Below are positions 6,294-58,140 of a DNA stretch of 64,000 nucleotides, piece after piece. The position numbers were made by a program, and so were the translations under genes. The stretch is taken from assembly GCF_003918875.1 (NCBI RefSeq), contig NW_025766747.1, positions 248,001 through 312,000 of the forward strand. The letters run 5' to 3'. A model generated the notes under the pieces. The model was given only the letters and a program-made list of their open reading frames with translations, made no database searches and was not told the DNA's origin. How positions within the stretch are numbered: the stretch's first letter is position 1; every line of letters begins with the position of its first letter. This DNA comes from Haliotis rubra. Its lineage: Eukaryota.

Positions 6294-6550
6294 GGGATTA
6301 GAGCTTGTGGCTAGTCTGCTACCAATTGTGGTTTGATCAAATAGAGATTACCTTTCGTCGGTTTCCTGTTTGCTTAGTCTCGTAATTTACCTGTCAGGAA
6401 CAACCAGCTTTATTAAGCAAGCGATGAAGAGCATTATCCGATCTTCGGAATTGGCTTACCCCAAACCGCTTATCTCCCTTTACCATCCTATTGGTGAGAG
6501 GATGAAGGTAAGTAAGATGGCGACAGTGGCGGCCGACTTTACTGCACGCG
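6294..6550. promoter_or_regulatory. Recurrent non-coding module B (GGATTA/AGATTA-containing) upstream of Fox copy 1
   Basis: ggatta...agatta...gtttcctgtttgctt...ggcgacagtg...ctgcacgcg; homologous blocks at 35506, 41588 and 57883. Confidence 0.5.
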
Positions 6551-7129
6551 ACAGACGTCTTTATCCAAGTTCACAGAAGACCGGCGAATTAGTAAAAGTG
6601 GAACGTTCCTATTGTAATTGATGATTGACAAAAAAATCATTCTAGGTTGCCACAGATTAATTACGTGTTACAGGTCCAAGGAATATTCCAAACTTTTTTG
6701 ATATAACCAATAACATTAGCAGTATGACCAGCAGTATGTTTTATGACGTGTTTTATCAAGGAAGGCTTTTCTCCATACAACAGCGTGATACGCGTACGTA
6801 TCAAGACAAAAAAGTAATATTTTTCTGCCTGTACGCTGATGTAGACAGCAATGTAGAAACGGAAGAGGAACACATTTTCTGCAAAGACAACTTCTCTTTG
6901 GCAATAGATGCAACCTTTCGGCCAGTTGCGTAATAACACATTAGCATCTACACCGAAACGTCGCATCTGTTTCAATAAAGATGTTAACTATCGATTAAAA
7001 TACCAGCTTCTAAAGCCAGTTAAATGTAAAAGCTGTTTGAACATGTCACTTTTAAACCTAAATAGAAAGCCTTGCAGCAAATGTTTTGTCCACTTACATC
7101 ATCAATGTGTATATCATATTTAAGGTTAG

Positions 7130-7225
7130 ACTTTGGTTTTTAACGCAGCTCTCAGGAATATTCCAGCGATGTTGAAGCAGTCTGTAAATATTCGAGTCTG
7201 GACCGGACAATCCAGTTATGAACAA
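7130..7225 (-). mobile_element. SINE family B 3' fragment
   Basis: aatattccagc...gtctgtaaata-tcgagtctggacc-gacaatccagt is the reverse complement of the family B 3' half. Confidence 0.6.
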
Positions 7226-8371
7226 CTTGAAACTGTAAGTATTTTGTGTGCTCGGGAGTTGCATCATAAGAAATATGTCCGTCCTCTCCTTTAGTCCGTT
7301 TTGGTGGGAGTTTGTCACAAATACTTACATTATCTAACGGCACTGTGTTTTCACGTTGACGAAAGGCCAAAGTGACGCAGGTACAGTTAAGACATACCAT
7401 ACATTAGCCATACCATACAGTTTATACATTATCATAAATTATTACAAGTGCATCCAGTGCTGAAGGTGTAGCCTTATACATGTACATACCATATACAATA
7501 TAGATCACCAAATGTGAATCTATTCACGATAGTAGGTATGTGATCGAAGAGTTGTAACTTACTCCTTGGTTTGATATAAAGGTGTTCCATTTGTCAACAG
7601 TCCACTTATTATATTTCCATGGTTACAGAACCAATCAGTATCACGCCCTCTCGTGTTCAGGGTCGACCACACCACAAACAACACCACTCTGGTGGATGCT
7701 ATTTGTATAGGCATCTAATTAGCCAAATATGTTTGAAATTATATGTAGTAACCTGATAGCATACACACAATGCCATGTAATGTTAGACGCGAGCAGGGGC
7801 GTCTTCCCAGATCACGTGTTTATGCCGAACGCTGTGATATCGATGTTTGTGTCCACATAATGCGATTCAATTAAGCTGGACTTTGATAACCGTGTCCACA
7901 ATTCAGTCCAACTTTTTAATGAAGATGAATGTTGTGTTGTGTATGTTCTGTTTGATGTAATGTATTTGCAGAGACAAACCTACTTAGCCGATTTTGTCAA
8001 GGCCGACAGGTTCAGTGAAAGTTGACTACGACCATTGACTTCATGTACATGTTCAAAATACTAAACAGGTTAAACTGACCTTTCACTTCAAAGTCAAGTT
8101 GGTTAATACCCATACATGTTCATCGTGTTCAGCACGATGGTTTCAACTTTCTAAACCACAACCATACACGTACAAATTGATATATTTATGTACTCTTGCA
8201 TTGATACATCTCTTTAGTGGTGAAGTTCAATCAATCTTTATTCAGTACTTAAAACGGCTACATGCCTGTAGTACATTTAAAGTTTACACGAGTATAGTCT
8301 GTTTGCAGTGAAAACGTACCGATGAATTTCACTCTAAACAAAAAAGGTAAATCGAATAAAGTGAAATTAAG

Positions 8372-8745: not shown

Positions 8746-8747
8746 AC

Positions 8748-11412: not shown

Positions 11413-11474
11413 CTTGTCGGTGTGATAAGCGATGAACGGTAGTATCGACCATCATGTAAATGTATAAGACGAGC

Positions 11475-13955: not shown

Positions 13956-14201
13956 CCCGTGAAGATCTAGGTTGGAATTGATCTTCAGTAACTCATGCTT
14001 GTCGTAAGAGGCGATGGACGGTTTCAGGTGGTCAGGCTCGCTGACTTTGTTCACACATGTCATCGTATTCCAATTGTGTAGATCGATGCTCGTGCACTTG
14101 ATCACTGGATTGTCTGGTCCAGACTCGATTTTTGCAGACCGTTGCCATATAGCTGGAATATTGCTGAGTACAGCAAAAACCTAAACTCACTCACTCACTC
14201 T
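13956..14201 (+). mobile_element. SINE family B, full length
   Basis: cccgtgaagatc...cttgtcgtaagaggcga...gctggaatattgctgagt...aaactcactcactc. Confidence 0.85.
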
Positions 14202-18000: not shown

Positions 18001-21000
18001 ATGCTGGAATATTGCTAAAACAGCATGAAGCCTTACTCACTCATCCCTGAGTAAGTGAGCACTGCTTACAAGAGTACAGAATACCAGCGTCACAACACTG
18101 CAATGGCATTGATGGCTCCTGATACCAGACAGCTGGTATTGCCATGTGTTGTGTTGCCAGCCTGGAGTGTGGTGTTGACTTGTGTCCTTGTGTTGCCAGC
18201 CTGGAGTGTGGTGTTGACTTGTGTCCTTGTGTTGCCAGCCTGGAGTGTGGTGTTGACTTGTGTCCTTGTGTTGCCAGCCTGGAGTGTGGTGTTGACTTGT
18301 GTCCTTGTGTTGCCAGCCTGGAGTGTGGTGTTGACTTGTGGCCTTGTGTTGCCAGCCTGGAGTGTGGCGTTGATAGTTGTCCATGTGTTGCCAGCCTGGA
18401 GTGTGGTGTTGACTTGTGTCCTTGTGTTGCCAGCCTGGAGTGTGGTGTTGACTTGTGTCCTTGTGTTGCCAGCCTGGAGTGTGGTGTTGACTTGTGGCCT
18501 TGTGTTGCCAGCCTGGAGTGTGGCGTTGATAGTTGTCCTTGTGTTGCCAGCCTGGAGTGTGGTGTTGACTTGTGGCCTTGTGTTGCCAGTCTGGAGTGTG
18601 GCGTTGATAGTTGTCCATGTGTTGCCAGCCTGGAGGGTGGTGTTGACTTGTGTCCTTGTGTTGCCAGCCTGGAGTGTGATGTGATGCGCCACCTACTACA
18701 GGCCCAGATACTCATGTCAGAGTGGCAGTGTCTCCCCTCCCTGCTGCAGTTAAACCAGGCCCACACCAAGCTGGCTAGCTGGGCCAACATGGCGGCCATC
18801 AAAGAGGTGAGTTGTGGGTGACCAATGTTTCCAGTATGGCCAGGTAGCTATATCATCTTTGCAGCAGCATAGTTCATTGCACTTAAAACACTACAAGTAC
18901 TTTCACATCTGTATCAGCTTGTCTTCATCAATCTTGTAGCAGTCTGTTAGTAACATATCACCTCTCTGGCATAGATGCATAGTGTTTACAACTCTGACAT
19001 ATTCCTGATTGTAGTAAGCATGGTAGGGATGAGAGCAGAAGGATGCTTGTATGATTATATACTGTAACTGCCTGTCATGTTCATAATCCCTGTCATTTTG
19101 TTCAGCCTGCGTCCAAGGATAAGCCTACACCGGTAAGCTTGATGGTAGAAACATTGCTGTCACTTGTAGGCTGGGGAACAAGTTGCTTTGTAGTCTGTGT
19201 GATGTGTCATCTCTTTCTTATCTTTGGAATTAATTCTGTGTGGCTTTTATATGTTGTGTGTAACCAATGGTTTCACAATCTGTATACTGGAAATGGAAGG
19301 TTTCGTGTGCTAATATCACTAACATCAGGAGGTTGCTGAACATGATGTCAGCGACAGGCAGGAGCGGTGGGGTAGCCTAGTGGTTAAAGCATTCGCTTGT
19401 CACTCCGATGACTCATGTTTGATTCCCCACATGGGTACAATATGTGAAGCCCATTTCTGGTGTCCCCGCCGATGATATTGCTGGAACAATGCTATAAGTG
19501 GCGTAAAAGTAAACTCACTCACCCATTCACCGCTCAAACTCCAAACCATGTTAGCATAGTCAGTGATCTGATTCCGCCAGTGTCGATTAAAATAGGGCCC
19601 CAGCATATGAATGTGTCATCAGAGACAACCTGGTTCCCCTGGTGTCATTGATTCCTCAGGGGTGGGACATTGTACATGATAGAGTTCACTGGTGTGTCTG
19701 GTCGAAGCACAGTTTCTCTAAGTGATACAACTGCTGTTGACAACAGCACAAATGGTTTTTAACATCTCTATCACACAAAGTACAATACATCAATGCAGTG
19801 TGTTGGATCCCTGGCTACTCACACATCCGTAGGCATCTTGAACTGTTCTGTATATTGGCAGAGGTACAGATAAGCTGCGTATCTGCATAAATTACGCAAA
19901 TATTTATGTGAAAACTCAATTCCTATTAAGTCTATTGTGTACAAGTACGCTTGAATATTTGTAAATACTCAATAAATGTGATCTTACATGCGTACACACA
20001 AAAATGTCAAATCTTAGCTTGCGTACCGGTGGATAGATAAAATAACAAGTATATTGAGACGTTCTATTTCAGGACATGAACATGACAACTTGCAGTCTTT
20101 CTTATCGTTTCTCATATTACAGATCAAATATAAATAACAAGCATTAACATTTAGACTTTACTATATTTTCAAATTTAATGGAAAATGGCAAAATACCCAA
20201 TTGAGTTTGAGTGAGTTGAGTACAATATATTTGGTTACTCAAAGAAAAATTAGGATACCCAATTGAGATGAACACAAGTGAGTACTTAACTCAATTACCC
20301 AAACAGTTATCTGTAGCTCTGTTTTGGTTTTAGGTGCTAAGATATTCTTCAAATCACATTTCACTACCCAGCTATGTTTTCAGTGTTCATCATGATGTTG
20401 TGGTCATTATATGTGAATGGAAATATATGCTGGACAGAAACTACCCCTTCCCCCTTTAAGCCTTGCTGGAGTGCTGAAGTCAAACTGTTTCATTCCCATC
20501 AGCACCATACAGGTTGTATGTTACATGAAACACACCAAAAAGTTCAGATAGTTGGCAGTGCAAATTTGTGTAAATCAGTAAATCACACTACTACTCAGGA
20601 ACAGACTTGCTGATATTTTGTATATGCACCTTAAAGGAAGATCACTTGTTTTATATATATTAACACAGATGACATAGATAGTACACATATAAAAATGGGT
20701 GGTTCTCAACACAGTTTCATTAGAGTCAGTGAGTGAGTTTAGTTTTACACCGTACTCAGCAATAGTCCAGCTATATGAGGGCGGTCTGTAAATAATCTAG
20801 TCTGGACCAGACAAGCCAGTGATCAGCATCTTGAGCATCGATCTACGCAATTAGGATATGATGACATGTGTCAATCAAGTCAGCGAGCCTAACCATCCGA
20901 TCCCCAGTTTGATAAGAACAGATATCACCTGTAGATATGACTTGGTCTTCAGTAAATGATTTTATAACATTTTGTAATATTTAAAACCTAGTACCGGGGT

Positions 21001-25451: not shown

Positions 25452-25645
25452 NNNNNNNNNNNNNNNNNNNNNNNNNNNNNNNNNNNNNNNNNNNNNNNNN
25501 NNNNNNNNNNNNNNNNNNNNNNNNNNNNNNNNNNNNNNNNNNNNNNNNNNNNNNNNNNNNNNNNNNNNNNNNNNNNNNNNNNNNNNNNNNNNNNNNNNNN
25601 NNNNNNNNNNNNNNNNNNNNNNNNNNNNNNNNNNNNNNNNNNNNN
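25452..25645. other. Assembly gap (N run)
   Basis: Run of n. Confidence 0.99.
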
Positions 25646-30720: not shown

Positions 30721-31767
30721 TTAGGGGTAGTTTTCCGTGTTCCTGGTGGAGGGTATAGAACTGAAAGACTGTCGTGTATATGGGGACACATGATAATGAA
30801 GGTTTTCATCAGCACAGGACCCTTGGGAGCTCACTTGAGGCATATAGGTTCCATTCTGGGGAGAGCTGGAGAGAGGGGAGCCGGTCAGGGAGCTGTTGAT
30901 GCTGCTGGCGTTGTAGTAGCCGGCTGGTGGAGAGTAGACTGTAGGAGATCCCATTGTCCAAGGACTGGAATCAGGCTTGCTCGATATGCTGTAGGGGTGT
31001 CTCTGGGTCAGTCCCTGGGGTAAAGAGCCGAGACTGAGGGGGTTGAAACCTGTGTAAGGAGATGGGCCCCCATACCATCCGAATAACTGTCCATAAGAAC
31101 TAGCAGGATGGAATGGAAGATCATCTCGACGTTGCTTTTGTGCCGACTTGAAACGTTTGGAACGACGAAGGAAACTACCGTTACCGAACATGTCCCCACA
31201 AGATGGATGCAGAGCCCACAGGTTACCCTTGCCTGGTTTCCCTGGAGGTCGGGGCACCTTGACGAAACAGTCATTGAGGGAGAGGTTGTGTCTGATGGAG
31301 TTCTGCCATCTCCGTTGGTTGTCTTGGTAGTAGGGAAATCTCTTGATGATGTAGTTGTAGATGTCGTTGAGAGTCATCATGCCTGTAGTGGAACTCTCGA
31401 CGGCCATGGTGATGAGAGCCACGTATGAATAGGGAGGCTTCTTGTTGGAAAATTGTCTGCTTTGCTGGGACAGAGTTGACGTTCCTGAGACAGTGCCTAG
31501 ACTTGTGTCTTCTTCCCCATCGTTGTCGGAGCTCAAGGAGGAAGATGGTGATGGCAAGGTGATGTGGTCGTTGTCTGGAGAATGTTGCTGTTGAAGGGGG
31601 TCCCTCATGTCTATAGGAGAGAGTTCAGACCTGACGTCGGGTTCACGTACACCAAACTTGGACGAAGTAGGGTGATGTTGTGTTGCATATAGCGGTGCCA
31701 TCGTCATAGCCGTTGATGGGTCAGCAACAGCACCTCCATACTGAAACGTTGTTGGATTAAACAGCAT
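30721..31767 (-). CDS. foxAB: FoxAB-like forkhead transcription factor, copy 2 (348 aa, intronless)
   Basis: Intact ORF with forkhead domain; TATA at 31842-31849 and TAATCC at 31859-31864 upstream; AATAAA signals near 30515-30530. Confidence 0.9.
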
Positions 31768-33189
31768 TTTGTATTCTCAGAGAATCCTGTATACTGTACT
31801 CGAGCAGCAGTGAGACTATACCTACATACTGGGCCGGGGTGTATATATATCCGTGTAATAATCCCCAAAGAAAACAACTAGTTGCAAACATTTCTCCAAG
31901 TACAAAAAGGGTAGTTATTGTTAATGTACACTGATTGGACTAAATCCACAATGCCCCGCGAGAGGTGTGGCTAGTTTGTCAGTATTGTATTTTCCGAAGT
32001 GCTATTGGCTACTGCATCACAGTTACCCCGCCTACTTGTCCGCAGCTCCTCAAGTAACCACGCCTCTATTTTCGCCTTGGTCACCAGTGTGTTGTTTTAA
32101 CCATGTTGGCCTTGCAGTTGTTTCTCACGAACGTGTTCAGTCATTTTGTAAAATGAATGATGTTGTTTTGCTTAGGCGATGAACTGAAAAATCTGTAAAT
32201 TTAGTTTACCAAGATAACGAATTTCAAACAAGTTTATTAAGAATTCCATTTCCCATAAGATTATATAAACATCAAAACAAGAAGTTTATACCTTTTGGAT
32301 TCTGACCAAGTATGATAAATCTTTGTAATATTTTCTGCATAATGTTTAATCGGTCTGTTAAAAAAATGCACAGATTTATGGTTTAAACATATTTGTATTT
32401 CGCCAAAGCCGAAACCTGTATAAGAGAACAAGCCTGGTGGCTTATATAAACGCCGCTCCAGTATATTTTTCCAATGACTGGATACATAAATGAAATAATT
32501 TGGCAACAAAAGAATAATAGAGAGACAAAATAACAGATATATGATTGAGTAATGAATATGTTCGTTATGGTGTTGGTTATGCCTAGCAACGAAATGAGCT
32601 GCTGCAGAAAATCAAGTTATATAAAATTTGTCTTACACTGAATATATATTTTGAGGTGATAATCACTGGAAGCGGTTACTTTTAGAAATGAACTGGTGTA
32701 ATGAGTTGATAATTTTACTATTAGTTGAGTTATTCAATGCGCCGTTACCGTATAAAGTAGTTTTAACATCGTATCCTTGAATATGAAAATACACAGATTT
32801 ATCAGCCAGTTAAATAAGGTCTGAAATGTTTTGGCATTTTATTTATTTGATATTATCGTATCAATTTACGATATAGATGCTTATACAGATATGGGGTAGT
32901 GGGGTGTACACATCGACACAAGCGAGCCACGGTAAATATGAGTTATTTGTGACCTACTGTGTACATGTTGTATATGAACATATAGTACTGGTGAGATATA
33001 ATGACGGTATGTAAGTTGTTTATGCTTGTTCTCATGTTGTCAGTGTTAATAATCGCGGGAAGCGCCACGTGCTGCCAGCATGCTGACGGAAAGAATCATC
33101 CCAAACCGAACATTTTCCAAATAGGAAACAGTCGAAGTTAACAGAGAAACTTGTTTACACAGAAGCTGCACATCTGATCGGGAGGTATC

Positions 33190-34107: not shown

Positions 34108-34771
34108 AAATATGTATTGAACAATGAAAAACCTCACGTAAGACCTAACTGACAAAATGCTGCTGGTCATTGATTGTTTATGAAGACAATATTGATTTCT
34201 CCTTATTTATGAGGGGAGTTCATAATCGTGCATCAAATATACATGTACTGTAGGGAACATAAATCATGAAGGTACACTTTTATTGTTTAATTTCTATGTG
34301 AGCCATTAAGCATCTTCAAGTATGTTAATAAAATTCACATTCTTTAAAAATGTTTTCCCGTATCTAAATATTGATGACTGCCTATATATAATTCAATTTG
34401 AACAATGTTGGACAAATCCATTTCACGGACAGGAGAGTGTATTTGGTATTTCCTTAATAGTCTAAACAAACCCCCATCGAAACAAAGAAAAGAGAGTTCT
34501 CAAACGTATTCACATCTCATTCTATAAACTAGCGTCTTTCAGTTTATGACGTCATCAAGTTGTAAGCGCATGTACCAATCTCCAGAGATAGAGCTATGTT
34601 TCATTGTGGTATACACCACGCATCGCCATTCATTGTTCTTTTCTGTTTTTCGCTATGTTATATATGACAGTAGTATCTACTCGGATGGTGTGGAATGACA
34701 TCACGTAGGGGGATGACGTTGTATTGTAGTAGCGTACCACACGCAACATAAGGTGCAGCTCCCATCGATAA

Positions 34772-34910
34772 TTATGACACGAGTAATCGTACAGGGGAGA
34801 CTTTGGACTCGGCTAATGGGTTGTCTCAACACTTATTGACATCACAATGTATCAACATCATACCTTGAATTAATCGATTATCACAGTAACAACATCTTTG
34901 TCAGCAACTA
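34772..34910. promoter_or_regulatory. Module A upstream of Fox copy 2
   Basis: gagtaatcgtacaggggagactt...gttgtctcaacacttattgacatcacaa. Confidence 0.5.
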
Positions 34911-35047
34911 CATCTTTAGTGACACGTAGAAATAGGGAAGTGATGACACTTTCAGTAACTATGTCTTCATTGTATGTGGGAAGGTTTGTCTGCCCTTTTC
35001 CTTAAGATCTCTTATGAGCTTCTATAGCTCCTCTGTTGCATTTGTTG

Positions 35048-35292: not shown

Positions 35293-35505
35293 GTAGCATT
35301 TGTTGGGAAGAGGCTATATCTTTCAAATTTGAATAAGCTCCCTACATGGTTCGTCTGTCCCAGGAGCGTGTTCTTGCTGTTATGTACAGGACACGCACAT
35401 TAATACCAGACACCTGTGTGTCCCATATATTCATGGAGTGGCAACAGGGTGATACGTTAATGCCAGATCTTTCATGTCACCGCACAAGAAACACGATTAA
35501 ATCAA

Positions 35506-35760
35506 AACTGGATTAGGATTAAAATTGCGGTCGACTTAGAGAATTTCTATTGTTTTATCAAATACAGATTATCACTGTTGTTCGAAGTAAGTACAATATT
35601 GATCCAATTACACTTTGCTTTTTCTGTCTAATTAAGATTCGGTTGTAACAATGTGCGTTATTCCTTTACGGCGAGGAATATCGACACTGGCCTATGTAAA
35701 CATACATGTCCGTCATGGTCTAGATTCAAGGCGACAAAGATGGCGACAAGAACGGCATTC
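35506..35760. promoter_or_regulatory. Module B upstream of Fox copy 2
   Basis: aaactggattaggatt...ttgttttatca..cagattat...gtacaatattgat...aagatggcgaca. Confidence 0.5.
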
Positions 35761-38427: not shown

Positions 38428-39504
38428 TTACATAAAGTTAGTGTATTGGTTTCCCAAAGGTTGAATGGACTTTGTAGCACTGGGGAGTGATTGCTGTACT
38501 CGCTGGTACAGAGAGTCATAAGGATTTCTAGATCTCTCAAAGCTGGACGATGAAACTTGAGGCATATAGGTCCCACTCAGGGACGAGCTTCCCGGCGGAG
38601 AGCTGGAGAGAGGGGAGCCGGTTAGAGAGCTGTTGATGCTGCTGGGGTTGTAGTAGCCGGCTGGTGAAGAGTAGACTGTAGGAGATCCCATGGTCCAAGT
38701 ACTGGAATCAGGCTTGCTCGATGTGCTGTAGGGGTGTGTCTGGGTCAGCCCCTGGGGTAAGGAGCCGAGACTGAGGGGGTTGAAACCTGTGTAAGGTGAT
38801 GGACCCCCATACAATCCGAATAACTGTCCATAAGAACTGGCAGGATGGAATGGAAGATCATCACGACGTTGCTTTTGTGCCGACTTGAAACGTTTGGAAC
38901 GACGAAGGAAACTACCGTTACCGAACATGTCCCCACAAGATGGATGCAGAGCCCACAGGTTACCCTTGCCTGGTTTCCCTGGAGGTCGGGGCACCTTGAC
39001 GAAACAATCATTGAGGGAGAGGTTGTGTCTGATGGAGTTCTGCCATCTCCGTTGGTTGTCTTGGTAGTAGGGAAATCTCTTGATGATGTAGTTGTAGATG
39101 TCGTTGAGAGTCATCATGCCTGTAGTGGAACTCTCGACGGCCATGGTGATGAGAGCCACGTATGAATAGGGAGGCTTCTTGTTGGAAAATTGTCTGCTTT
39201 GCTGGGACAGAGTTGACGTTCCTGAGACAGTGCCTAGACTTGTGTCTTCTTCCCCATCGTTGTCGGAGCTCAAGGAGGAAGATGGTGATGGCAAGGTGAT
39301 GTGGTCGTTGTCTGGAGAATGTTGCTGTTGAAGGGGGTCCCTCATGTCTATAGGAGAGAGTTCAGACCTGACGTCGGGTTCACGTACACCAAACTTGGAC
39401 GAAGTAGGGTGATGTTGTGTTGCATATAGCGGTGCCATCGTCATAGCCGTTGATGGGTCAGCAACAGCACCTTCATACTGAAGCGTTGTTGGATTAAACA
39501 GCAT
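38428..39504 (-). CDS. foxAB: FoxAB-like forkhead transcription factor, copy 3 (358 aa, intronless)
   Basis: Intact ORF; N-terminus and 5' UTR nearly identical to copy 2 but C-terminus distinct; TATA at 39579-39584, TAATCC at 39594-39599. Confidence 0.9.
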
Positions 39505-40931
39505 TTTGTATTCTCAGAGAATCCTGTATACTGTACTCGAGCAGCAGTGAGACTATACCTTCATACTGGTCCGGGGAGTATATATCCCTGTAATAATCCT
39601 CCACAAAAACATCTTACAATTCCAATTTGTTCCCAGAGAGCAACTCTATTGTTAGGTAATTGTACCCCCGGGAATTACCGGAGGTCCGGCCAGTGTAAAT
39701 GTAGCATAGATGCTATTGGCTACTTGTAAACAGAGGTCCCGCCTACGTGTTTAGACACCAATCACATTGGTAGTGTAAGCTCTCGCCTGACGCTGGATGC
39801 AATGAGAAATGCCTACCTGATTGTGAAATATTTTAGCTAAATATTTCTTATTTCTTCATAAGCCGAATAAACTATCATTTGTGCTCAGTGTCTTTCTCTA
39901 CAATAGAATTTTGAGCACAATGCAACACTTCTAATTACAAACGTACACATTTAGAGAAAGGCTTATTAGTCCGTTATTCATTGATGTAGTGAAACCCGTA
40001 TCCATAGGGTTCCGGTAGCCTGAGGGTTATCTTGTACATGTCAACTTCTAAAGCTTAAGTCAACATTGATGTCATAACCCTGTAAAACAGACGACATTTT
40101 AACAAATCTATCTAAATCATAAAGTTTTATCCGAGGGTAAAAACGGAAATGATCGCCTTCAAAATATTAAAATATGTCCACATGTATATTTAGATCCACA
40201 TCAATCTTCTCAGTGTATCATATTTGCAGTCGTTCTGTATATTGAAATGTTAATGTCATGAATGCTAAAAAAGGACATATCACAGTCCACTATGAGTGAA
40301 GGGCTGAGTAGGCCACACTTGTTGTCAAAGGTTGTGCATATACTGAGTGACGACTACATGCTTGTACATACTGAACCTAGCGATACCTGGCGACACATTC
40401 AGGGTGACAGACTGTTAGTAACGTGTTGTACTGGCGTTGTAAGGGAAAGGTCACATGCTGAAATAACCATCACATGTCGAAAACACCATGGGTCCTGGAA
40501 ATAGTAATCGAAGACATACAGCTTCTTTAAAAAAGTTTCAACACTTACTGACTTGAGAACAGAGCAGTATCAATTATGACTGAAATAACATCCAATCTGC
40601 TCCAGCAGCCGAGTGGCATCAGCATCCTGTAAACATACTTACATACAATATACATACACCGGAGAAATGGGCAGGATTGTAATGAATAACTAAACAGGCA
40701 CGTATTCGTGCTAACTGATATAGGTGTTGCTCAATTTTTCATTTGTTACAACATATTTTGTGTTTGTAGTAGTTAACCGAATATTGACAATTATTTCTTT
40801 TGAATTGAATTCTCTTGAATCTGTTTGTGTACCTGTATTGATTATATGCACGAAGAGTATGTTTTTAGACTGAACAGTGACAATATGGTGAAATGCTCAG
40901 ACAATACTGATATGACATGTTCATTAAGGAT

Positions 40932-41080
40932 GACACAAGTAATCGTATCGGCCAGTCTTAATGACTCGTTTAGTGAGTTGTTTCTACACTTATTGACTTC
41001 ACAATAAACATACAAAATCACACTTCTCGGGTTGTCAGTATCGATCATTACAGAAACAACATCTAATCACTGCCAGCAGC
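40932..41080. promoter_or_regulatory. Module A upstream of Fox copy 3
   Basis: gacacaagtaatcgtatcgg...tgagttgtttctacacttattgacttcacaa...cagaaacaacatctaatc. Confidence 0.5.
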
Positions 41081-41587
41081 TCTTTCAACTAAACGTAGAC
41101 CACTTCATCTAACAATTAGGCTGTGCAAACTGTGAAACTGCCCATTGTGACAGTGTATACAAGAAACGGAATTTTTCAATTCCGCTTTTTGCACATATGT
41201 AAAATATGAGCTAGAGTGACACTCCTTTATTTAAAGGTTTATTTAATTCATTTTTTATATCCAAGTAATTTTAAAGTAGGAGATAGAATTACATGTAGTA
41301 ATGAAAAATCGTTACAGTTCTAACATTTACCAGATATTTTCTAAAATATGGATTGCATCTTTGGAGCACATACATGCATAATTTCACACCTCAGTGTGGT
41401 ACAGATAATTTGTGAAACTGAAATACCAGTTGTTGAAATATTGTGATAAAGGTGACAAAATACATGTGGGTGTCATCTAATGCTGTTCATTACACTGGGT
41501 TTAACGATCTGTAAGAGTTGTTCGTGAACATGTTAAATAAACACCACAGGCTTTTGATGTACCCGCACAGGTAACAGGATTTAAAAG

Positions 41588-41850
41588 AAACTGGATTAAG
41601 ATTCGAACGTCGTGGGACATAAAAACCTTTTGTTTTATCACAGATTATTATTGTTGTTCATAGCAAGTACAATATTGATGCAGTTACTGTTTGTTTGCGC
41701 TTCCTAATACACCGTCAGTTGCACCGCCGCCCTTTTGTTAATCGGCTTCTAACGAATGACTTTAAAATGGATTACTGTAAAACTGCTTTCCTTCCTTTCT
41801 GTCGTCCCTATATGAGAATCAGTGTAAGTAGGGAGGCGACAGTAGCGGGT
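41588..41850. promoter_or_regulatory. Module B upstream of Fox copy 3
   Basis: aaactggattaagatt...tgttttatcacagattat...gtacaatattgat...tgtttgtttgcgcttcctaat...ggcgacagtag. Confidence 0.5.
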
Positions 41851-43316: not shown

Positions 43317-43716
43317 TCAACTCTCGACGACCATGGCGATGAGAGCCACATAGGAATAGTGAAAACTGTTTGTTTTGTTTGGAGATAGTTGACGTTCCTG
43401 AGACACCATCAGGAGGACTAAAACCTTCCTCATCGTCGTTGTCGGAGCTCAGCGAAGATGAAGGAAAAGAGAATGCCTCAATCAGGTTGCTTGAAGGTTC
43501 CTGTTCAAACTTACATACGTTGTTATTATTGCTGCTGAATGCAACCCCGAATTATCTTCTGCTACAAATGACGTCTGCCACTAGCCGTGTATTGTACAGA
43601 GTCAGGGATCAGAAGGTGCATGTACAGTGTACGGTAGTGGCAGGTGTTTTGTCGTGACCAGTGTATACAGTCTATCAGTGTTGTTAAGTGGAAACATATA
43701 TGTAAAATAACAACAT
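43317..43716 (-). pseudogene. Deleted FoxAB-like pseudogene (seventh copy)
   Basis: Minus strand translates [34 protein letters not shown], then a frameshifting deletion of NKKPP, then YSYVALIAMVVES-stop; the rest of the forkhead is absent. Promoter relic gagattatcc at 43794-43803. Confidence 0.8.
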
Positions 43717-44905: not shown

Positions 44906-45106
44906 NNNNNNNNNNNNNNNNNNNNNNNNNNNNNNNNNNNNNNNNNNNNNNNNNNNNNNNNNNNNNNNNNNNNNNNNNNNNNNNNNNNNNNNNNNNNNNN
45001 NNNNNNNNNNNNNNNNNNNNNNNNNNNNNNNNNNNNNNNNNNNNNNNNNNNNNNNNNNNNNNNNNNNNNNNNNNNNNNNNNNNNNNNNNNNNNNNNNNNN
45101 NNNNNN
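44906..45106. other. Assembly gap (N run)
   Basis: Run of n. Confidence 0.99.
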
Positions 45107-45396: not shown

Positions 45397-45653
45397 CCAG
45401 TGAAGGTCCGGGTTAGAATGTTAGATTGAACCTTCAGTAACCCATGCTTGTCGTAAGAGGCGACTAACGGGATCGTGTACCGGTGGTCAGGCTCGCTGGC
45501 TTGGTTGACACATGTCATCGGTTCCCAATTGCGTAGATCGATGCTCATGCTGTTGACCACTGGATTGTCTGGTCCAAACTGGATTATTTACAGACCGCCA
45601 TATAGCTGGAATATTGCTGAGTGCGGCGTAAAAGTAAACTTACTCACTCACTA
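45397..45653 (+). mobile_element. SINE family B, full length
   Basis: ccagtgaaggtccgggttagaat...cactcactcac; imperfect flanking duplication ending acaaagt. Confidence 0.9.
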
Positions 45654-45978: not shown

Positions 45979-47067
45979 TCACTTCGACATCCCGAAAAAA
46001 GACATATTCAGAGCAGCTCCTGTGAACGTTGGATAGAACTGAGGAGAGGAATAATTATACAAATTCTGAATAGCACTGGAGTTCGGTGATTCTGGGATGT
46101 ATGTCCCTGGCAGAGGCGGGTTTCTCGACTGGACAGAGGGCATCTGTGGCATATAGGCCGTTTGATGTCCTGGGGGAGTGCTGGAGAGAGGGGAGCCGGT
46201 CAGGGAGCTGTTGATGCTGCTGGCGTTGTAGTAGCCGGATGATGGAGAGTAGAGTGAAGGAGATCCCATAGTCCAGGTACTGGGGTCAGTCCTGCTTGTG
46301 CTGGGGTGTGTCTGGGCCAGTCCCTGGGGTAAGGGGGAAAGAGATAGGGGGTTGAAGCCTGGGTAGGGGGACTGACCCCGGTAAAGACCAAGCTTTCCAT
46401 ATGCTGTGAACCGCTCAATCAGCGCGTCGTCTTGTCGTTGTTTGTGTCCTGACTTGAAACGTTTAGCACGACGAAGGAAACTACCGTTACCGAACATGTC
46501 CCCACAAGATGGATGCAGAGCCCACAGGTTACCCTTGCCTGGTTTGCCTGGAGGTCGGGGCACCTTGACGAAACAATCATTGAGGGACAGGTTGTGTCTG
46601 ATGGAGTTCTGCCATCTCCGTTGGTTGTCTTGGTAGTAGGGAAATCTCTTGATGATGTAGTTGTAGATGTCGTTGAGAGTCATCATGCCTGTAGTGGAAC
46701 TCTCGACGGCCATGGTGATGAGAGCCACGTATGAATAGGGAGGCTTCTTGTTGGAAAATTGTCTGTCTTGTTGGGTTTGAGTTGACGTTCCTGGGACATC
46801 ATCAATGTGTACATCGTCATTGCCGTCCTTGTCTGTGCATGGTGACGGTGACGGCAGAAGGTCTCCGCCAGGGGAGTCTGTCTCTTCTCGGTATGTGGCT
46901 CTAAGAAACATGTCTATTCCCTTTGGCGTTCCAAGAGGCGCAGTGGACTCCGGTGTTGCCGGCGCAATCGTAAATGTTTGAGGCCCCATGTACGGAGGTG
47001 TCTCGAGCTGCATCACGGCCTCGCCAGTCACGCTGCCGTACGGAGATAACAGTGTATGATTCAACAT
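45979..47067 (-). CDS. foxAB: FoxAB-like forkhead transcription factor, copy 4 (about 362 aa, intronless)
   Basis: Intact ORF from ATG 47067; only copy with RRAKRFK; TATAAA at 47129-47134 and gagattatcc at 47144-47153. Confidence 0.9.
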
Positions 47068-47894
47068 GGTCACGGTGATGTAGCAGTGAAGGTACAGTGT
47101 TGTATACCGTCGTCACCCCGTCCATGGGTTTATATTCCCCGCCGAGATTATCCCCTCAATGCAGTTTGTTTTGTCTCTTGATTAGTCAGCCATTGTTGGG
47201 TAATTTGGAATGGGTCGTGTATTATACAACAGGCACGTCTTTAATTGGTCGTTCATTCCTAGTGGCCGGCTCATCTGCAGCTACGCCCACCATTGTCCAT
47301 TCTATTAGGCCGCCCCAGTTTTAGATAGGTCAGGGAATTTGGGTCGTTTTATTCAGTTTTATTATTGTATTTCTTCATGCATATCCCAAAGCCGATTTTA
47401 GTCTGTAAAGTGAAAAAGAAAATGCAATCAGAAACGTAGATAATGCTATACTGTCTCACAAACATATTAGTCTTGAAGGTCACACATACATGCTGATAGA
47501 TATAGTGTACAACGGTAGCAGTCCTATAATGTTGGTGATGTATTAAAGTACACGCGAAGCTGGTGCACTAAATAGCTTATTTGGCATGAACCACTTAAAG
47601 ATGAAAAATAATGATAGAATACTTTGCATGTTCGCGATCGTATATACAAAATGCATCCAAGGTATCAATTGAAGCAGTAGTACACCTAGGGTATCCAAGC
47701 GTTGTATCCGCCGTGTTGGTAAGGGAAATCTTTGCTCTTGTCACACAGTCTTGCGGAGATGTTTTTGTCACTCTCACACATACTCTTTGAGAAAAGATTT
47801 GAGCACGATTCTTATTTTGTAAACAATCTAAAAAGCGAAAATACATCAACGTACACTTGTGTTTGTAGGGGTAGGTTTGAAGCTGAAGTGCAAA

Positions 47895-48848: not shown

Positions 48849-51074
48849 TAACATGATAAGCGCTTAACCAGATCTGTGATATATCATGTACGATATGTTC
48901 TTGCACGTTCATGACACAGCCTTCATCCGGGTAACTCCTGGCTGTTACTGTGGGTGCCACCGAAGACACTAATAAAACAATACATGTAACACCTCAACAG
49001 TGAGATCCCTGCACCACTATTCATTGTGATCTGACTGCAAGATGTACATCACACCCTAATCAATATACCTACCCACTGGCTGCGACGTACCCCCCGGACT
49101 CTCACCCCCTGGGGATGATTGACCAATATGTCACTCAAGGATCAACTTTGTTAAACATGTCAGTTTTAACTACTAGAATAAATATTAACTATTCCAAATT
49201 GACGATTGAAAGGTGTACAACAAAGTCGAAAATTGCTGCTCTGTATTTGTCAGTAATTGGAAATGATGACAATACTAGCACGATATGCGAACTGTATTGT
49301 TCATCAAAATACAGGAATGTCTTAAATCACCATTAATGGAAAGACAATAGCAATCCATTAAGTCAGCAAATATCATTATATGTTTGAATGGAGGATATGT
49401 AGACGTGACAGACTATGGAATTGGTTTTATTATCAGGACGAATAAGAAAACACACGCACGCACGCACGCACATACACACTGTGTTGGGTTATCCGCGGAT
49501 TAGGAGTATTCACCTTAATAATATACATGTGACACGAGCAGTTGTATCTGATTACCGTTCATGGTTTCATGATGGCGTTATTGGTATCACAACACAGCAA
49601 CACCAAACTTATCGGTTGTTCGTATCGATGATCGCAGAAATATCATTCACTCTGTGTCAATTTAGCTTCATACTGTTCATAGTGTGATTTTAGAAATGAT
49701 GTCTGCTACAACAACAAATCCAAATAGATAGCGAGCGGTTGGATTTCACCCTATTTTCAACCTGCGAAAGGCTGTTGAACAAGAACACAATGATGACTGC
49801 TGGGGCTATTACTCACACGTAGCAGTGAAATATTGCAAACACACAGAAATTGTTGGACAGTGATACTCTTTTCTCAACATGGAGTTATGCCACTTTAACG
49901 ACTCTAAGTTAGGGACATGGTACTATAGTGTAACTGTGAATGAGTGAGTGAGTTTTCAGCAATATGACGGTTGCGAACACCAGAAATGGCCTTCTACATT
50001 ATACACACCTTTGTCGTGACGAGCTAAACAGCTTGGCCACCCTAGAGGCCGCAATGAATGAATGATTGAATTTGTTCTCCATGGCGTTTTGACATTACCC
50101 AAAGCAAAGACCTGAAGTGTTATGCATGTCTGAATATGTTTTAATGTTAATTATGTGAATAGATACGTTTACAAATACGCAAAAAATACAAAAAATCCCT
50201 CTTATCAATTTTGTATCAAGTTACAAATCGTGTTTTCTGCGTCAAGCGAGTGTTCAAGATGAGAACAATAAATACTCTGCCATTTCAATCCATTCATGAA
50301 TTCATGATGCATGAAAACAAAGTTACGAAGGGCTGTCAAAAAGTAGTGTGTCTCACCAAGAAAATGATACAAATGCAGCTGTTTTTATGTTTTATTTTTC
50401 TACATATTATCTGTCAAGGAAATTGGTTTTGCTGTGTTCCAGCCTCACGATCCCCATTGTATTTCACTTTTTATATTGGTACCCCCATAAACGCAAAATC
50501 TGCAATAAATGCATCCCAAACTTCAGGAAACAAAATATGCAAGAAACATTTTGTGTGTTTTGAGATAGGTAGAAGTCTGCTAGAATCAAACTTAGATATT
50601 AAAGTGCATAAAAAGCAACTTGAAACTACAATCGCTTGTCAAAGTGACAACCCCCACCCTTCACGTTTACCGAAACAGCTTGTTTTGGAGGCACTACCCA
50701 CCCTCTTTCAGTTGACGTAATCATAAGACATAACTTATTTTAATGGTTTCACTTATTCAGACATAGTGTCAAGGTCACACAAGTGTCAGTGCTCAATATA
50801 TTGTAAACAGTGACAGCTTGAATATCTGGACACAATGTTTTTGGAAGACTAGAATGGAGGTGTCCTTAAAAAACATCCCCCTCTAAATATAAATCAAGCA
50901 ATCCGAATCTTTGACGGGAAGTCATCCAATACTATACTGAACATATGATGGTATTTGAGAGCATACCATTATTCAAGAGGTACCAAATGACAGATCGTTT
51001 TTCATTTTCTGCAATTATTTTACACATATTATACCCCAATGTCTTGTGATGACTAATATGTCGTTAACCACAGT

Positions 51075-52282
51075 ATTCCTACATCGGGCAGCCAGATTCT
51101 TCTTAGCCGTCGCTAGAAAAACTCCAAATTTAGCAGTTCGTGGCGAAATGGGCTGGGTTTCTCAGTATACCAAACAAAAAATTGAGGTTCTTCGTCTTTG
51201 GCGTAAACTTCAGTTACTTGAATTTAGCAGAATACCCAGCGTTATTAGCAGATGGTCATTTAATTGGAGGAGATCTTGGTATAGTGGAGCTCATAAATTA
51301 TTTATTAGTTTTCATTTACCTATAAATGATCTGTTTAGTATTTCACATGAGGAGTTTGTTGCGGCTAAAGAACACCTTAAGGCACTAGACAGTTTTGATT
51401 GGTTTTCTGGGCTCTGGAATGATAAAGGGCAGGACAACGGAAATAAATTACGTACTTATCGTCTTTTAAAAGATTTTTTACAAGTTGAACATTATGTTGA
51501 AACAATTCTACCTAGGTCACATCGTAGTATCTTGAGCAAATTCCGTTGTGGCACTTTGCCATTAGAGGTAAAATTGGGTAGATATTCTCGTCCGAAGTCT
51601 CCCCTTCATGAAAGGGTGTGTACTCGCTGTAGTAGCAATGCCGTTGAAGATGAATTACATTTTCTGGTTAACTGTGATTATTATTCAGATCTCAGATATA
51701 ATCTTTGGAAGGAAATAACCAGTGTCCATCCTACATTCTCCTCTATGTCAGCAGTAGATAAAATGGTATTCTTACTTACAAATAACCAGTTCGTAAAACA
51801 CCTTGCCGCACTCGTCCATACTATGTTTAGGCGCCGGAATATTTCTGTAGAATAGGTAACTCTACAATGTACTTATAATAATAACGTCAACGTGTTTGTT
51901 ATTTATGTAATTTATGCATTTTAGGTAAGAAAGTGTAAGTGTGTGTGCGTGCGTGCGCGTGTATGTGGGCCTGTCTGTCGTAGGTGTCTGTCTGTAGGCT
52001 CGTGCGCTCGTGTGTGTGTGTGTATGTGTATGTGTGCGTGCGTGTGGGTGTGTGAAGGTGTATGCGTTTTGTGTTTGTGCATACAGTTCGGCCTGCGTGT
52101 GTGTATGTGTGGGTGTGATTTTATTACTAATGTTTTATACAACTGTGATATTTGTGTCTCATAGGCCTTATGGCTGGATGCTGCTTTTAAACTCTCGCAA
52201 TAATGTACCGTCCTTTCTAATGTTCTGCAGCATGTGACACATTAATAAACTATATTTCTTCTCTTCTTCTTCTTCTTCTTCT
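51075..52282 (+). mobile_element. 5'-truncated non-LTR retrotransposon (open ORF2 C-terminus, TG-rich 3' UTR, (TTC)n tail)
   Basis: HRAARFFL..TPNLAVRGEMGW, GNKLRTYRLLK, FRCGTLPLEVKLGRY, RVCTRC..VEDELHFLVNC zinc knuckle; aataaa followed by ttc repeats. Confidence 0.88.
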
Positions 52283-55874: not shown

Positions 55875-56967
55875 TCACTGATCACAGTCTAATGCTGTAC
55901 TGAGGCTGGGGTAAAGGTGGCCCCTGTACAACCGGGCTGAGAAGTGCTGTTGTAGAGCGAGATACGAAGTGTGGGTCTGGTCCGACAGGGCTGATGGCTT
56001 GTCTGTGCTGTATACCCGTTCGGGCCCTGAATGAGAGCTGGAGAGAGGGGAGCCGGTCAGGAGCTGTTGATGCTGCTGGCGTTGTAGTAGCCGGCTGGTG
56101 GAGAGTAGACTGTAGGAGATCCCATAGTCCAGGTACTAGGGTCGGGGTTGCCTGGTGTGCTGCAGGAGTGTGTCAGTCCTTGGGGTAAAGGGCCAAGATT
56201 AAGGGGGCTGAAACCTGGATAGGAAGATGGAGCCCTGTAAAGCCCAATCTGTCCGTACGGACTGACGTGGTGTAGAGTAGCGTTGTTGCAGTGTTGTTTT
56301 GGGGCCGACTTGAAACGTTTGGAACGACGAAGGAAACTACCGTTACCGAACATGTCTCCACAAGATGGATGCAGAGCCCACAGGTTACCCTTGCCTGGTT
56401 TGCCTGGAGGTCGGGGCACCTTGACGAAACAATCATTGAGGGACAGGTTGTGTCTGATGGAGTTCTGCCATCTCCGTTGGTTGTCTTGGTAGTAGGGAAA
56501 TCTCTTGATGATGTAGTTGTAGATGTCGTTGAGAGTCATCATACCTGTAGTGGAACTCTCGACGGCCATGGTGATGAGAGCCACGTATGAATAGGGAGGC
56601 TTCTTGTTGGAAAATTGTCTGCTTTGCTGGGACAGAGTTGACGTTCCGGGGAAGTTGTCAAGGCTGAGATTGATATCACCGTCGTTGTCAGAAGATAACG
56701 AAGATGATGGTGATGGCAGGAGGCTGTCGTCATCGTGTACTGAAAGGTGATAATGGTCGCTGTGCGAAGTCTCCTTGAGTTTGTTATCCAATCCATTTCC
56801 TGAAAGAGGCGCTTGCTGAGGCCTGCGTTTTACTATCGACGAGTGAGATACAGGTGAAATGGGGGGACGTCGGAGACGACACCTGCTGCACCATAAAGGG
56901 GGGTGGTATCGTCTCCATTACAGTACATCTGGAAGGTGTTTAAACACTGAACAGCTGAACTCGCCAT
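55875..56967 (-). CDS. foxAB: FoxAB-like copy 5; two apparent -1 frameshifts in G runs (young pseudogene or assembly error)
   Basis: ATG 56967 ([15 protein letters not shown]) lies about 60 nt below TATAAA 57027-57032. One extra base in G6 at 56861-56866 joins the forkhead ORF 56057..56791. gg at 56060-61 is ggg in copies 2, 4 and 6; restoring it extends the frame to TGA at 55875-55877. Confidence 0.75.
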
Positions 56968-57882
56968 ATTCACCCAAAGGAACAGGAAGGTACGCTTTAG
57001 TGTCGATACTATCCACAACTCTGGCATTTATAGCAAAACCGATTCATATTCCATAAGCGGACAAACTAGGAAACAATACAAGTAACATGCAGAAGAAGAA
57101 AGTCCAGTATGCGTTAATTAAACGCCTGCTGCCATTGACCGATCTCACTGTGCTTGTCTTTCTATTGTTGTAGGTGCGGGGATGTTCAGCTGCCCCAGAT
57201 CGCCCGAGGTTTAGCTATTATACAAAGCAAACACTTATTATCTGTGTTGACTCAAACATTTCACGCTCGTTAACATCTACTTATGTGTGTAGGTTTAAAC
57301 GATTTGTACAAAGACAACTAGAACCCAAGAAGTACTCTGTATGCCATTACAACTTGATTTAAACAGTATTTAATATGTAATACACAATAATGAATAATAC
57401 ATAAAGGATCAGTAAACAGACTGCATCAAGCCTAATTTTATAAATGCTTCTCCTAGACATAAACTTATAACGAATGAATTTTGTGGAAATACAGAAAATG
57501 AGCAGACAAATGCTTTCATAATTCAATAATTTCAGACTAAATACAGCATATGGAACCACACTTTATGAACAACGGTCGGTATCATTCAAGAAATTGTAAA
57601 CAGACAACTTGATACTCAGCATTACTATAGATCAGTAGCGAGCAGTTTTAATGTGATGATAATAAAATACATTTATAGTTATATTTCATTTTTGAATATT
57701 GGTTTCGTTAAGATTCGCGACTGACAATGGTGCGACATAACAACAGCTTGTCTTAACAACATGGTGACTCAACAACGATGTGAGAAGACATGACCAAAGC
57801 TTGTTGCCTCCCGCCTGTAGACATAAGCTGGCCGAGTCGGCCTCTTTGATGTCGTCATGCAACTAACGAGATTAAATCAGCT

Positions 57883-58140
57883 CTGGATTAGGATTAGATT
57901 AGAATCCATGTCTTGATAATCTAATTGTAATTTCATTAGGAACAGATTATCACTTTAATTCATGAAAGAGAAAATATATATCAGTTTCCTGTTTGCTTGC
58001 GCCTCCTAATGCACCTTGGTCGGAACGTTTGTAGCAGTGACCAAGTCCATGCAAACATTCCTAAGTCCCCGACACTCGGCCTGGTCAGCGACTGTGTTCT
58101 GGCTTAAGGGGGCGACAGTGTTGGACTTGCTGCACGCGTC
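57883..58140. promoter_or_regulatory. Module B upstream of Fox copy 5
   Basis: ctggattaggattagatta...cagattatcact...gtttcctgtttgcttgcgcctcctaat...ggcgacagtg...ctgcacgcg. Confidence 0.5.

What the first reader, a model, noticed from the sequence alone, without database searches (positions are those of the whole stretch)
6294..58140. Module B: a GGATTA-rich element of about 250 bp recurs upstream of four Fox copies
Seen: homologous blocks at 6294-6550, 35506-35760, 41588-41850 and 57883-58140, all in the same orientation and 4.3, 3.7, 2.1 and 0.9 kb upstream of copies 1, 2, 3 and 5. Conserved islands (GGATTA, AGATTA, tcctgtttgc, ggcgacag) are separated by diverged spacers, and there are no TIRs, tails or target-site duplications. 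Inference: a co-duplicated enhancer with clustered K50-homeodomain sites, echoing the promoter motif.
Basis: partly seen in the sequence, partly recalled or inferred. Interest (0 to 1): 0.72.

Follow-up and report, generated by a model that had tools for sequence, protein, structure and literature searches.

The report
Conserved upstream module of abalone foxAB array
A roughly 290-base non-coding block, found nowhere else in this 1.38-Gb abalone genome, sits in the same orientation upstream of most genes of a tenfold tandem foxAB array and keeps small conserved motif islands, so it is most likely a regulatory module copied along with each gene: a real but fairly ordinary kind of feature.

Summary
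The window comes from Haliotis rubra, judging by protein hits. It carries six of ten tandem, minus-strand foxAB-class genes. The four blocks are truly homologous. A profile built without the copy-1 lineage recovers block 1 at E 4e-16, with no false hit in 144 kb.

Refined extents are 6254-6532, 35468-35755, 41552-41848 and 57840-58124. Five more copies lie outside the window. Eight of the ten genes have the module, always in the same orientation and in the order promoter, module X, module B.

Whole-genome DNA searches hit only this cluster, whereas a neighbouring SINE gives more than 4500 candidates. The module is therefore not a transposon fragment. It has no shared ORF, no RNA structure and no terminal inverted repeats.

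It also occurs at matching positions in H. asinina, H. rufescens and H. cracherodii. It was not found beside the gene in Gigantopelta or a related contig.

Between old paralogues the flanks are unalignable, while conserved columns in B are clumped and change about half as often in independent orthologue pairs. This supports site-specific constraint.

A co-duplicated enhancer is the best reading, at about 0.6, but no expression or chromatin data could be obtained. "GGATTA-rich" is overstated. Only one TAATCC and one invariant TAATCT position are conserved, together with a forkhead-type TGTTTGC.

The parts
6254..6532 (+). GGATTA at 6295, AGATTA at 6345, TGTTTGC at 6367, GGCGAC at 6519.
   Evidence: nhmmer E 1e-76. 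Recovered at E 4e-16 by a profile that excludes its lineage. Motif positions.
35468..35755 (+). Tandem GGATTAGGATTA at 35510, AGATTA at 35566.
   Evidence: The orthologous copy in H. asinina is L014:14093-14357.
41552..41848 (+).
   Evidence: Orthologues are H. asinina L014:7693-7980 and H. cracherodii L017:19155-19457.
57840..58124 (+). This copy is the richest in TAATCY-type sites, with six.
   Evidence: The orthologue is H. cracherodii L017:1661-1859.
5035..5237 (+). Module X, a second conserved island specific to the cluster. This is the proximal copy upstream of c1.
5875..6056 (+). Module X, second copy upstream of c1.
34748..34930 (+). Module X upstream of c2, lying between the promoter and module B.
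40904..41106 (+). Module X upstream of c3, lying between the promoter and module B.
49579..49660 (+). Partial module X upstream of c4. This gene has no module B.
   Evidence: The H. cracherodii orthologue of c4 shows the same pattern.
1095..2060 (-). foxAB-class gene c1. The real start codon probably lies about 70 nt downstream of the first ATG.
30721..31767 (-). foxAB-class gene c2.
38428..39504 (-). foxAB-class gene c3.
45979..47067 (-). foxAB-class gene c4, which has no module B upstream.
56057..56791 (-). Fox copy c5, truncated. It is 99% identical to residues 108-303 of c6, stops early and has no ATG at the start of its ORF.
60996..62105 (-). foxAB-class gene c6. Its module B lies beyond the window, at contig 313973-314227.
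2073..2098 (-). c1 proximal promoter core: GGATTAT followed by the TATA box ATATAAAC.
31841..31864 (-). c2 proximal promoter core: GGATTAT plus a TATA-like box.
39578..39599 (-). c3 proximal promoter core: GGATTAT plus a TATA-like box.
47128..47153 (-). c4 proximal promoter core: GGATAAT plus a TATA box.

Best explanation
Module B is a roughly 290-bp cis-regulatory module, most likely a distal enhancer and possibly a silencer. It belonged to the ancestral foxAB duplication unit, laid out as promoter, module X, module B, and was copied with the gene each time the array grew.

Shown:
- It is non-coding and unstructured.
- It occurs only in this cluster within the 1.38-Gb genome.
- It keeps a fixed orientation and order relative to the gene downstream of it.
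- It is present for 8 of 10 genes.
- It is retained at matching positions in four Haliotis species.
- It stays alignable between paralogue lineages whose flanks have decayed to noise.
- Its conserved columns form short islands that change about half as often as the spacers in independent lineages.

Inferred:
- The islands are transcription-factor sites. Candidates, named from memory of published consensus sites, are a K50 homeodomain factor of the Otx/Gsc/Pitx type (TAATCC and the invariant TAATCT), a forkhead protein (TGTTTGC, possibly the array's own products), and a Q50 homeodomain factor (CTAAT).
- The shared sites give the paralogues a common input, which matches the GGATTAT-TATA proximal promoters.
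- Loss of B at c4 and m4, and lineage-specific changes in its 3' half, would let expression diverge.
For: Homology and extent.

Cluster specificity:
- Four divergent versions of B, and module X, hit only contig C1857.
- The SINE control gives 4562 candidates.
- A composite motif pattern gives 17 genomic hits, 7 of them in the cluster, against 4 for the reversed control. The 9 loci outside the cluster do not match the B profile beyond one marginal hit at E 0.035.

Collinear order and orientation.

Other species:
- Copies in H. rufescens, H. asinina and H. cracherodii score E 1e-33 to 1e-75 at matching distances from the genes.
- Each groups with its own H. rubra paralogue at 79-86% identity, against about 52-61% to other paralogues.
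- The paralogue lineages are therefore older than these species.

B as an identity peak:
- c1 vs m3: 0.97 inside B against 0.47 outside.
- c1 vs H. rufescens: 0.86 against 0.46.
- In c2-c3, c2-c5 and c5-c6, the first 100-200 bp score 0.62-0.67 against a noise level of 0.35-0.42.

Clumping of conserved columns: 7 runs of at least 6 columns (55 columns) against a mean of 2.6 (max 5) and 19 columns (max 38) in 40 neutral simulations at matched identity.

Cross-validated constraint: columns conserved in one set of lineages show substitutions at 0.11-0.13 in independent orthologue or recent pairs, against 0.19-0.24 for other columns (p 0.003-0.05).

Not coding, not structured RNA.

Proximal TATA promoters with a GGATTAT motif show that B is not the main promoter.
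Against: - There are no functional data of any kind.
- In the H. rubra vs H. asinina comparison for c3, B (0.80-0.86) is no better conserved than the 2 kb between it and the gene (0.81-0.89). Orthologue footprinting gives no contrast there.
- The island effect in orthologue pairs is modest, with an odds ratio of about 1.6-2. The pairs are few and partly non-independent, and alignment quality could contribute.
- Gene conversion is active in this array and could keep patches similar without any function.
- B was not detected upstream of the related genes in Gigantopelta or the related contig L015.
- Two genes do without it.
- Motif-to-factor assignments rest on memory of consensus sites. No motif library was available.
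Confidence: 0.6

Rival explanations
1. B is a neutral relic of the duplication unit. It has no function and looks conserved because occasional gene conversion between array members has re-homogenised small patches, as happens in the forkhead box.
For: - Synonymous divergence in the forkhead box is 0.02-0.17, against 1.0-1.5 in the rest of the coding sequence among 9 of 10 copies. Conversion therefore operates in this array.
- B of c1 and the distal B of m3 are 97% identical although their genes are not closest relatives.
- The orthologue comparison for c3 shows no extra conservation of B over its flanks.
Against: - Conversion predicts uniformly high identity within tracts. Between old lineages B is only 54-70% identical, with conserved columns clumped into 6-11-nt islands beyond neutral simulations.
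- The same columns also change less after speciation in independent lineages.
- Orientation and the order promoter-X-B are kept in every unit and in four species.
Confidence: 0.2
2. B is a transcribed element rather than an enhancer. It could be an alternative distal promoter, a 5' non-coding exon of the Fox gene, or the start of a divergent long non-coding RNA.
For: - On the + strand, the 3' part of B in the c1 group and c3 contains a splice-donor-like AGGTAAGT.
- It is followed by AAGATGGCGAC, which resembles (from memory) the YY1 core often found near transcription starts.
- Transcription could not be tested.
Against: - Neither the donor-like site nor the ATGG core is conserved in c2, c5 or c6.
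- Every intact gene in the window has its own TATA box 61-74 nt (13 nt for c1) upstream of the first ATG.
- There is no common open frame, no Rfam match and no consensus RNA structure.
Confidence: 0.12
3. B is a fragment of an old transposable element that happened to lie in the duplicated unit.
For: The region is full of SINE and LINE debris, and a SINE sits 130 bp from the c2 copy.
Against: - Searches of the whole genome with four divergent B versions return only copies in the cluster, whereas the SINE control returns 4562 candidates.
- There are no shared terminal inverted repeats.
- Loci outside the cluster that match the motif pattern do not match the profile.
- A profile search of the whole genome failed to run, so very old copies below about 70% identity are not excluded.
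Confidence: 0.03

Closest known systems
Duplicated conserved non-coding elements (dCNEs) retained next to paralogous developmental genes. These are described for vertebrate paralogues (from memory: McEwen et al. 2006, Genome Research).
   Same: Short non-coding blocks are kept near each paralogue of a developmental transcription factor. They stay alignable while surrounding DNA has diverged, and are interpreted as enhancers inherited by duplication.
   Different: Here the paralogues are a young, genus-level tandem array of ten genes, not products of whole-genome duplication. Identity is much lower (54-70% between old lineages). The element is not detected outside Haliotis. No functional assay exists.
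Homeodomain-site enhancers of the Bicoid/Otx/Gsc/Pitx (K50, TAATCC) type
   Same: B has one conserved TAATCC-type site and one invariant TAATCT-type site in the same orientation. A related GGATTAT motif lies just upstream of the TATA box of most copies.
   Different: Only two positions are conserved, rather than a dense homotypic cluster. The shared core GATTATC could also be read as a GATA-type site in some lineages. Binding was not tested.
foxAB genes of other spiralians: single-copy in Capitella and two copies in Owenia (PMC9539403)
   Same: The nearest annelid relatives of the array's proteins are the published Owenia FoxAB-1 and FoxAB-2. They share the [10 protein letters not shown] motif just before the forkhead domain.
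   Different: There are ten tandem copies in H. rubra, with fast-evolving N- and C-terminal regions and a homogenised forkhead box. Class assignment rests on best hits, not on a tree.

Membership tests
Paralogous conserved non-coding element / co-duplicated cis-regulatory module | Copies are significantly homologous while their flanks are not | tested here: met
   Profiles that leave out a lineage recover the excluded copies at E 1e-5 to 1e-16. Identity peaks at B over noise-level flanks. Apart from transposon debris, only the promoter, X and B align between old lineages.
Paralogous conserved non-coding element / co-duplicated cis-regulatory module | Non-coding, and not a structured RNA | tested here: met
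   Every frame has stops and no frame is open in all copies. No Rfam hit in the window. RNAalifold predicts 0 pairs.
Paralogous conserved non-coding element / co-duplicated cis-regulatory module | Fixed orientation and collinear position relative to the associated gene | tested here: met
   All nine H. rubra copies lie on the + strand and all genes on the - strand. The order promoter-X-B holds in c2, c3, the c1 group and three other species.
Paralogous conserved non-coding element / co-duplicated cis-regulatory module | Conserved at orthologous positions in other species | tested here: met
   Met within the genus: H. asinina, H. rufescens and H. cracherodii. Not detected upstream of the related gene in Gigantopelta aegis or in contig L015.
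Paralogous conserved non-coding element / co-duplicated cis-regulatory module | Evolves more slowly than neutral DNA, with site-specific constraint | tested here: inconclusive
   In favour: clumped conserved columns and a lower substitution rate in cross-validated island columns, 0.11-0.13 against 0.19-0.24. Against: no contrast with flanks in the H. rubra vs H. asinina c3 comparison. Conversion in the array confounds dating.
Paralogous conserved non-coding element / co-duplicated cis-regulatory module | Regulatory activity: open chromatin, enhancer marks or reporter expression | not testable with these tools
No chromatin data were available.
K50-homeodomain-responsive enhancer | TAATCC-type core sites are present and conserved | tested here: met
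   GGATTA is present at one aligned position in 10 of 13 copies. AGATTA is invariant in 13 of 13. Density is 4.1 per kb in the modules against 0.48 per kb in the region, although the copies are not independent.
K50-homeodomain-responsive enhancer | A dense cluster of several such sites | tested here: inconclusive
   Each copy has 2-6 TAATCY-type sites, but only two positions are conserved. The extra sites are specific to c2, c3, c5 and c6.
K50-homeodomain-responsive enhancer | Bound and activated by an Otx/Gsc/Pitx-type protein | not testable with these tools
   No binding or expression data were available.
Transposable element fragment (MITE/SINE/other) | Dispersed copies elsewhere in the genome | tested here: not met
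   Searches return only cluster copies. The positive control with a SINE gives 4562 candidates. Loci that match the pattern outside the cluster fail the profile. The sensitivity limit is roughly 70% identity.
Transposable element fragment (MITE/SINE/other) | Terminal inverted repeats, tails or target-site duplications | tested here: not met
   No inverted repeat is shared among the four copies. The ends of the block fade gradually, so no target-site duplication can be defined.
foxAB class (the associated genes) | Closest to published FoxAB proteins rather than FoxA or FoxB | tested here: met
   Owenia hits P0038 and P0094 are identical at their N-termini, and equal in length, to the published FoxAB-2 and FoxAB-1. 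Owenia FoxB is not among the best 120 hits. No phylogenetic tree was built.

The most novel reading that the evidence does not exclude
The ten-copy foxAB array could be a burst-expressed early-embryo gene battery, with genes that are intronless, driven by TATA boxes, fast-evolving outside the DNA-binding box and homogenised by conversion within it. On this reading, modules B and X and the GGATTAT-TATA promoter would form a shared switch. The switch would be read by a TAATCC-binding paired-like homeodomain factor and by the FoxAB proteins themselves through TGTTTGC. That would give array-wide co-activation and cross-regulation, comparable in logic to the amplified transcription-factor arrays used at zygotic genome activation in mammals. 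The comparison is made from memory and was not tested.
Probability: 0.12. Interest if true: 0.7.

Novelty: new member of a known kind. Interest (0 to 1): 0.4.

Why it matters
If B is a working enhancer, the abalone foxAB array offers a natural series. There are eight paralogues with the module, two without it, and several with lineage-specific motif gains or losses. That series could show how regulatory DNA is inherited, kept or lost after tandem duplication of a developmental transcription factor in a spiralian, a group in which very few enhancers are known. The conserved islands give short, concrete targets for mutation in a reporter assay. The finding also shows that foxAB, usually present in one or two copies, is expanded tenfold in Haliotis.

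Tried and rejected
- Transposon fragment: rejected.
- Structured RNA or microRNA: rejected. There is no Rfam hit and no consensus pairs.
- Coding exon or small ORF: rejected.
- Main promoter: rejected, because each intact gene in the window has a proximal TATA box.
- 3' element of the neighbouring gene: considered and judged less likely. c6 has a B beyond the end of the array. Similarity among B copies also follows the downstream gene and its promoter, as in the c2-c3 pair and the m1-m2-c1 group.
- Deep conservation: sought upstream of the related genes in Gigantopelta aegis and contig L015, and not found.
- Footprinting against H. asinina: uninformative, because the whole 2 kb from the gene to B is 80-89% identical.
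- Whole-genome profile search with the sequence-only model R1: failed three times.
- Literature: searches found no description of this abalone Fox cluster.
- Comparing the divergence of B with synonymous divergence: of limited use. The coding regions are mosaics of converted and fast-evolving parts.
Full report
**Context**

The window is contig C1857:248001-312000 of a 1.38-Gb assembly in 2855 contigs. Its Fox proteins are identical or near-identical to Haliotis rubra database entries. ORF listing and a six-frame genome search show ten Fox genes in tandem on this contig, all on the minus strand and each matched as a single uninterrupted stretch. Six lie in the window (c1-c6) and four just below it (m4-m1). 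Pfam finds a forkhead domain.

The two Owenia fusiformis proteins among the hits match the published FoxAB-2 and FoxAB-1 in N-terminal sequence and in length. Owenia FoxB is not among the best 120 hits (PMC9539403). The array is therefore foxAB class by best hit. No tree was built.

Copy c5 is truncated. It is 99% identical to residues 108-303 of c6, stops early and has no ATG at the start of its ORF.

**Assembly gaps**

N runs lie at 25452-25645, 44906-45106 and 60584-60720. None touches a block, and none lies between a block and the gene downstream of it. The observation therefore does not depend on them.

For gap 2, the sequence on both sides maps in the same order and orientation to one H. 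asinina locus. Gap 1 could not be checked. Nothing was filled in. A Fox copy or a module hidden inside a gap cannot be excluded.

- Pairwise blastn supports B2-B3 (70%, E 1e-22), B2-B4 (65%, E 2e-11) and B3-B4 (76%, E 3e-7). It only weakly supports B1-B3 (63%, E 1e-3).
- A comparison of all upstream regions showed the same block upstream of m3, m2, m1 and c6.
- A profile of eight copies then found nine copies in 144 kb, all on the + strand, with nothing else significant.
- A profile built only from c2, c3, c5 and c6 recovers the c1-group copies over their full length at E 1e-11 to 4e-16. The converse search also works.
- Refined window extents are 6254-6532, 35468-35755, 41552-41848 and 57840-58124.
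- Distances to the first ATG or ORF start are 4.19, 3.70, 2.05 and 1.05 kb.
- Genes m4 and c4 have no copy. m3 has two, one of them partial.

**What it is not**

- Not a dispersed repeat. Whole-genome DNA searches with four divergent versions of B return only cluster copies. The same tool gives 4562 candidates for the SINE 130 bp away.
- A composite pattern (GGATTAR, gap, AGATTAYY, gap, TGTTTG) has 17 genomic matches. Seven are in the cluster, against 4 for the reversed control. The nine loci outside the cluster do not match the profile, apart from one marginal hit at E 0.035.
- No inverted repeat is shared among copies.
- There is no Rfam family in the window, no consensus RNA structure and no common open frame.
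- It is not the core promoter. The genes have a TATA box 13-74 nt upstream of the first ATG, preceded by GGATTAT in 7 of 10 genes or GGATAAT in two more.

**Anatomy**

The 13-sequence alignment from three species shows these islands on the + strand:
- TTTGATGT
- AACAAGATTnAATCAAC
- GGATTAG (10 of 13)
- ATCAAAT
- AGATTAYC (AGATTA is invariant)
- CCTGTTTGCTT
- CTAAT..ACC
- GGCGACAG, after a poorly conserved stretch

A 24-nt segment is present in c2, c3, c5, c6 and one H. rufescens copy, but not in the rest of the c1 group. The first 180-200 bp are the best conserved part.

Read in gene orientation, the K50-type sites are TAATCC and TAATCT. TGTTTGC matches the forkhead consensus as I recall it. 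These factor assignments are inferences from memory.

A second island specific to the cluster, module X (about 180 bp), always lies between the promoter and B.

**Evidence for constraint**

1. Old paralogue lineages share only the promoter, X and B. The rest of their 2-9 kb upstream regions is unalignable or consists of transposon debris.

2. The lineages are older than the species. Each H. asinina, H. cracherodii or H. rufescens copy is 79-86% identical to one particular H. rubra paralogue and about 52-61% identical to the others. The absence of B but presence of X at c4 is shared with H. cracherodii, and H. asinina also shows no B in the 4.3 kb sampled upstream of its c4 orthologue.
   - H. 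rubra and H. asinina intergenic DNA is still 80-89% identical.
   - The c2 and c3 copies of B are about 70% identical.
   - If B were neutral, its flanks should still align at similar identity. They do not.

3. Conserved columns are clumped. There are 7 runs of at least 6 near-invariant columns (55 columns). Forty neutral simulations at matched identity give a mean of 2.6 runs (max 5) and 19 columns (max 38).

4. In a cross-validated test, columns invariant in one set of lineages show substitution frequencies of 0.11-0.13 in independent orthologue or recent pairs. Other columns show 0.19-0.24 (p 0.003-0.05).

**Caveats**

- The effect is moderate and the pairs are few.
- The simulations assume a star phylogeny.
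- For c3, the whole stretch from the gene to B is as conserved as B itself between H. rubra and H. asinina.
- Gene conversion clearly acts in the array. Synonymous divergence is 0.02-0.17 in the forkhead box and 1.0-1.5 elsewhere. Conversion could contribute to the similarity among B copies.

**Interpretation**

The best reading, at about 0.6, is a cis-regulatory module of the ancestral duplication unit, retained by selection in most copies. It would give the paralogues shared inputs. Its loss or modification would allow their expression to diverge.

The rivals are:
- a functionless relic kept similar by conversion (0.2)
- a transcribed element such as a distal promoter or non-coding exon (0.12)
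- an old transposon fragment (0.03)

Its emphasis on clustered K50 sites is stronger than the data allow.

**What could not be done**

A whole-genome profile search failed three times. No motif library or chromatin data were available. Literature searches found no description of this cluster.

Noticed in passing
window 1373-1672, 31131-31430, 38868-39167, 46437-46736, 56293-56592, 61430-61729: The forkhead box is 96-97% identical in DNA among all six window copies. Synonymous divergence there is 0.02-0.17, against 1.0-1.5 in the rest of the same genes. This points to gene conversion confined to the DNA-binding box in 9 of 10 array members. Copy m4 lies outside this pattern, at 0.6-0.7.
   Followed up: partly
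window 5035-5237, 5875-6056, 34748-34930, 40904-41106, 49579-49660: A second conserved non-coding island specific to the cluster (module X, about 180 bp) always lies between the promoter and module B. Its motifs include CAAGTAATCGTA and CAGAAACAACATC. It is duplicated in the c1 group and is also present in three other Haliotis species.
   Followed up: partly
window 43319-43411: A relic of a Fox coding sequence, 89% identical to part of the forkhead box, lies between c3 and c4. It is also alignable in H. asinina, so it is an old dead copy.
   Followed up: partly
window 56057-56791: Copy c5 looks truncated. It is 99% identical to c6 over residues 108-303, has an early stop and has no ATG at the start of its ORF. 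The H. cracherodii gene downstream of the orthologous module B is intact at 371 aa.
   Followed up: partly
window 18032-18760: A tandem array of a 39-bp unit, with at least 13 copies, is open in several frames on both strands. It is unrelated to module B.
   Followed up: no
window 35048-35338, 27595-27879, 13956-14199, 45397-45652, 63711-63953: An abundant SINE-like repeat ends in a CTCA/CTCACT tail. A genome search gives more than 4500 candidates at about 90% identity.
   Followed up: partly
window 51046-51855 and 33515-33925: Two ORFs without a Pfam hit share a Cys/His-rich C-terminal motif (RVC..C.....EDE.H.L..C..Y.DLR). They look like remnants of retrotransposon proteins.
   Followed up: no
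window 60584-60720: A third assembly gap, not listed in the program's note because it lies beyond the finding's end, sits between module B of c5 and the end of c6.
   Followed up: no
L008:414-620 (contig 228414-228620), outside the window: A partial extra copy of module B lies 2.3 kb upstream of m3, in addition to the full copy at 5.8 kb. This suggests that a duplication unit lost its gene there.
   Followed up: no
L015:8585-8885 and L016:9700-10001: The related Fox genes of Gigantopelta aegis and of an unnamed ENA contig share a conserved 5' leader with each other. They have no TAATCC-type site in the 300 bp upstream of the start codon and no module B.
   Followed up: no
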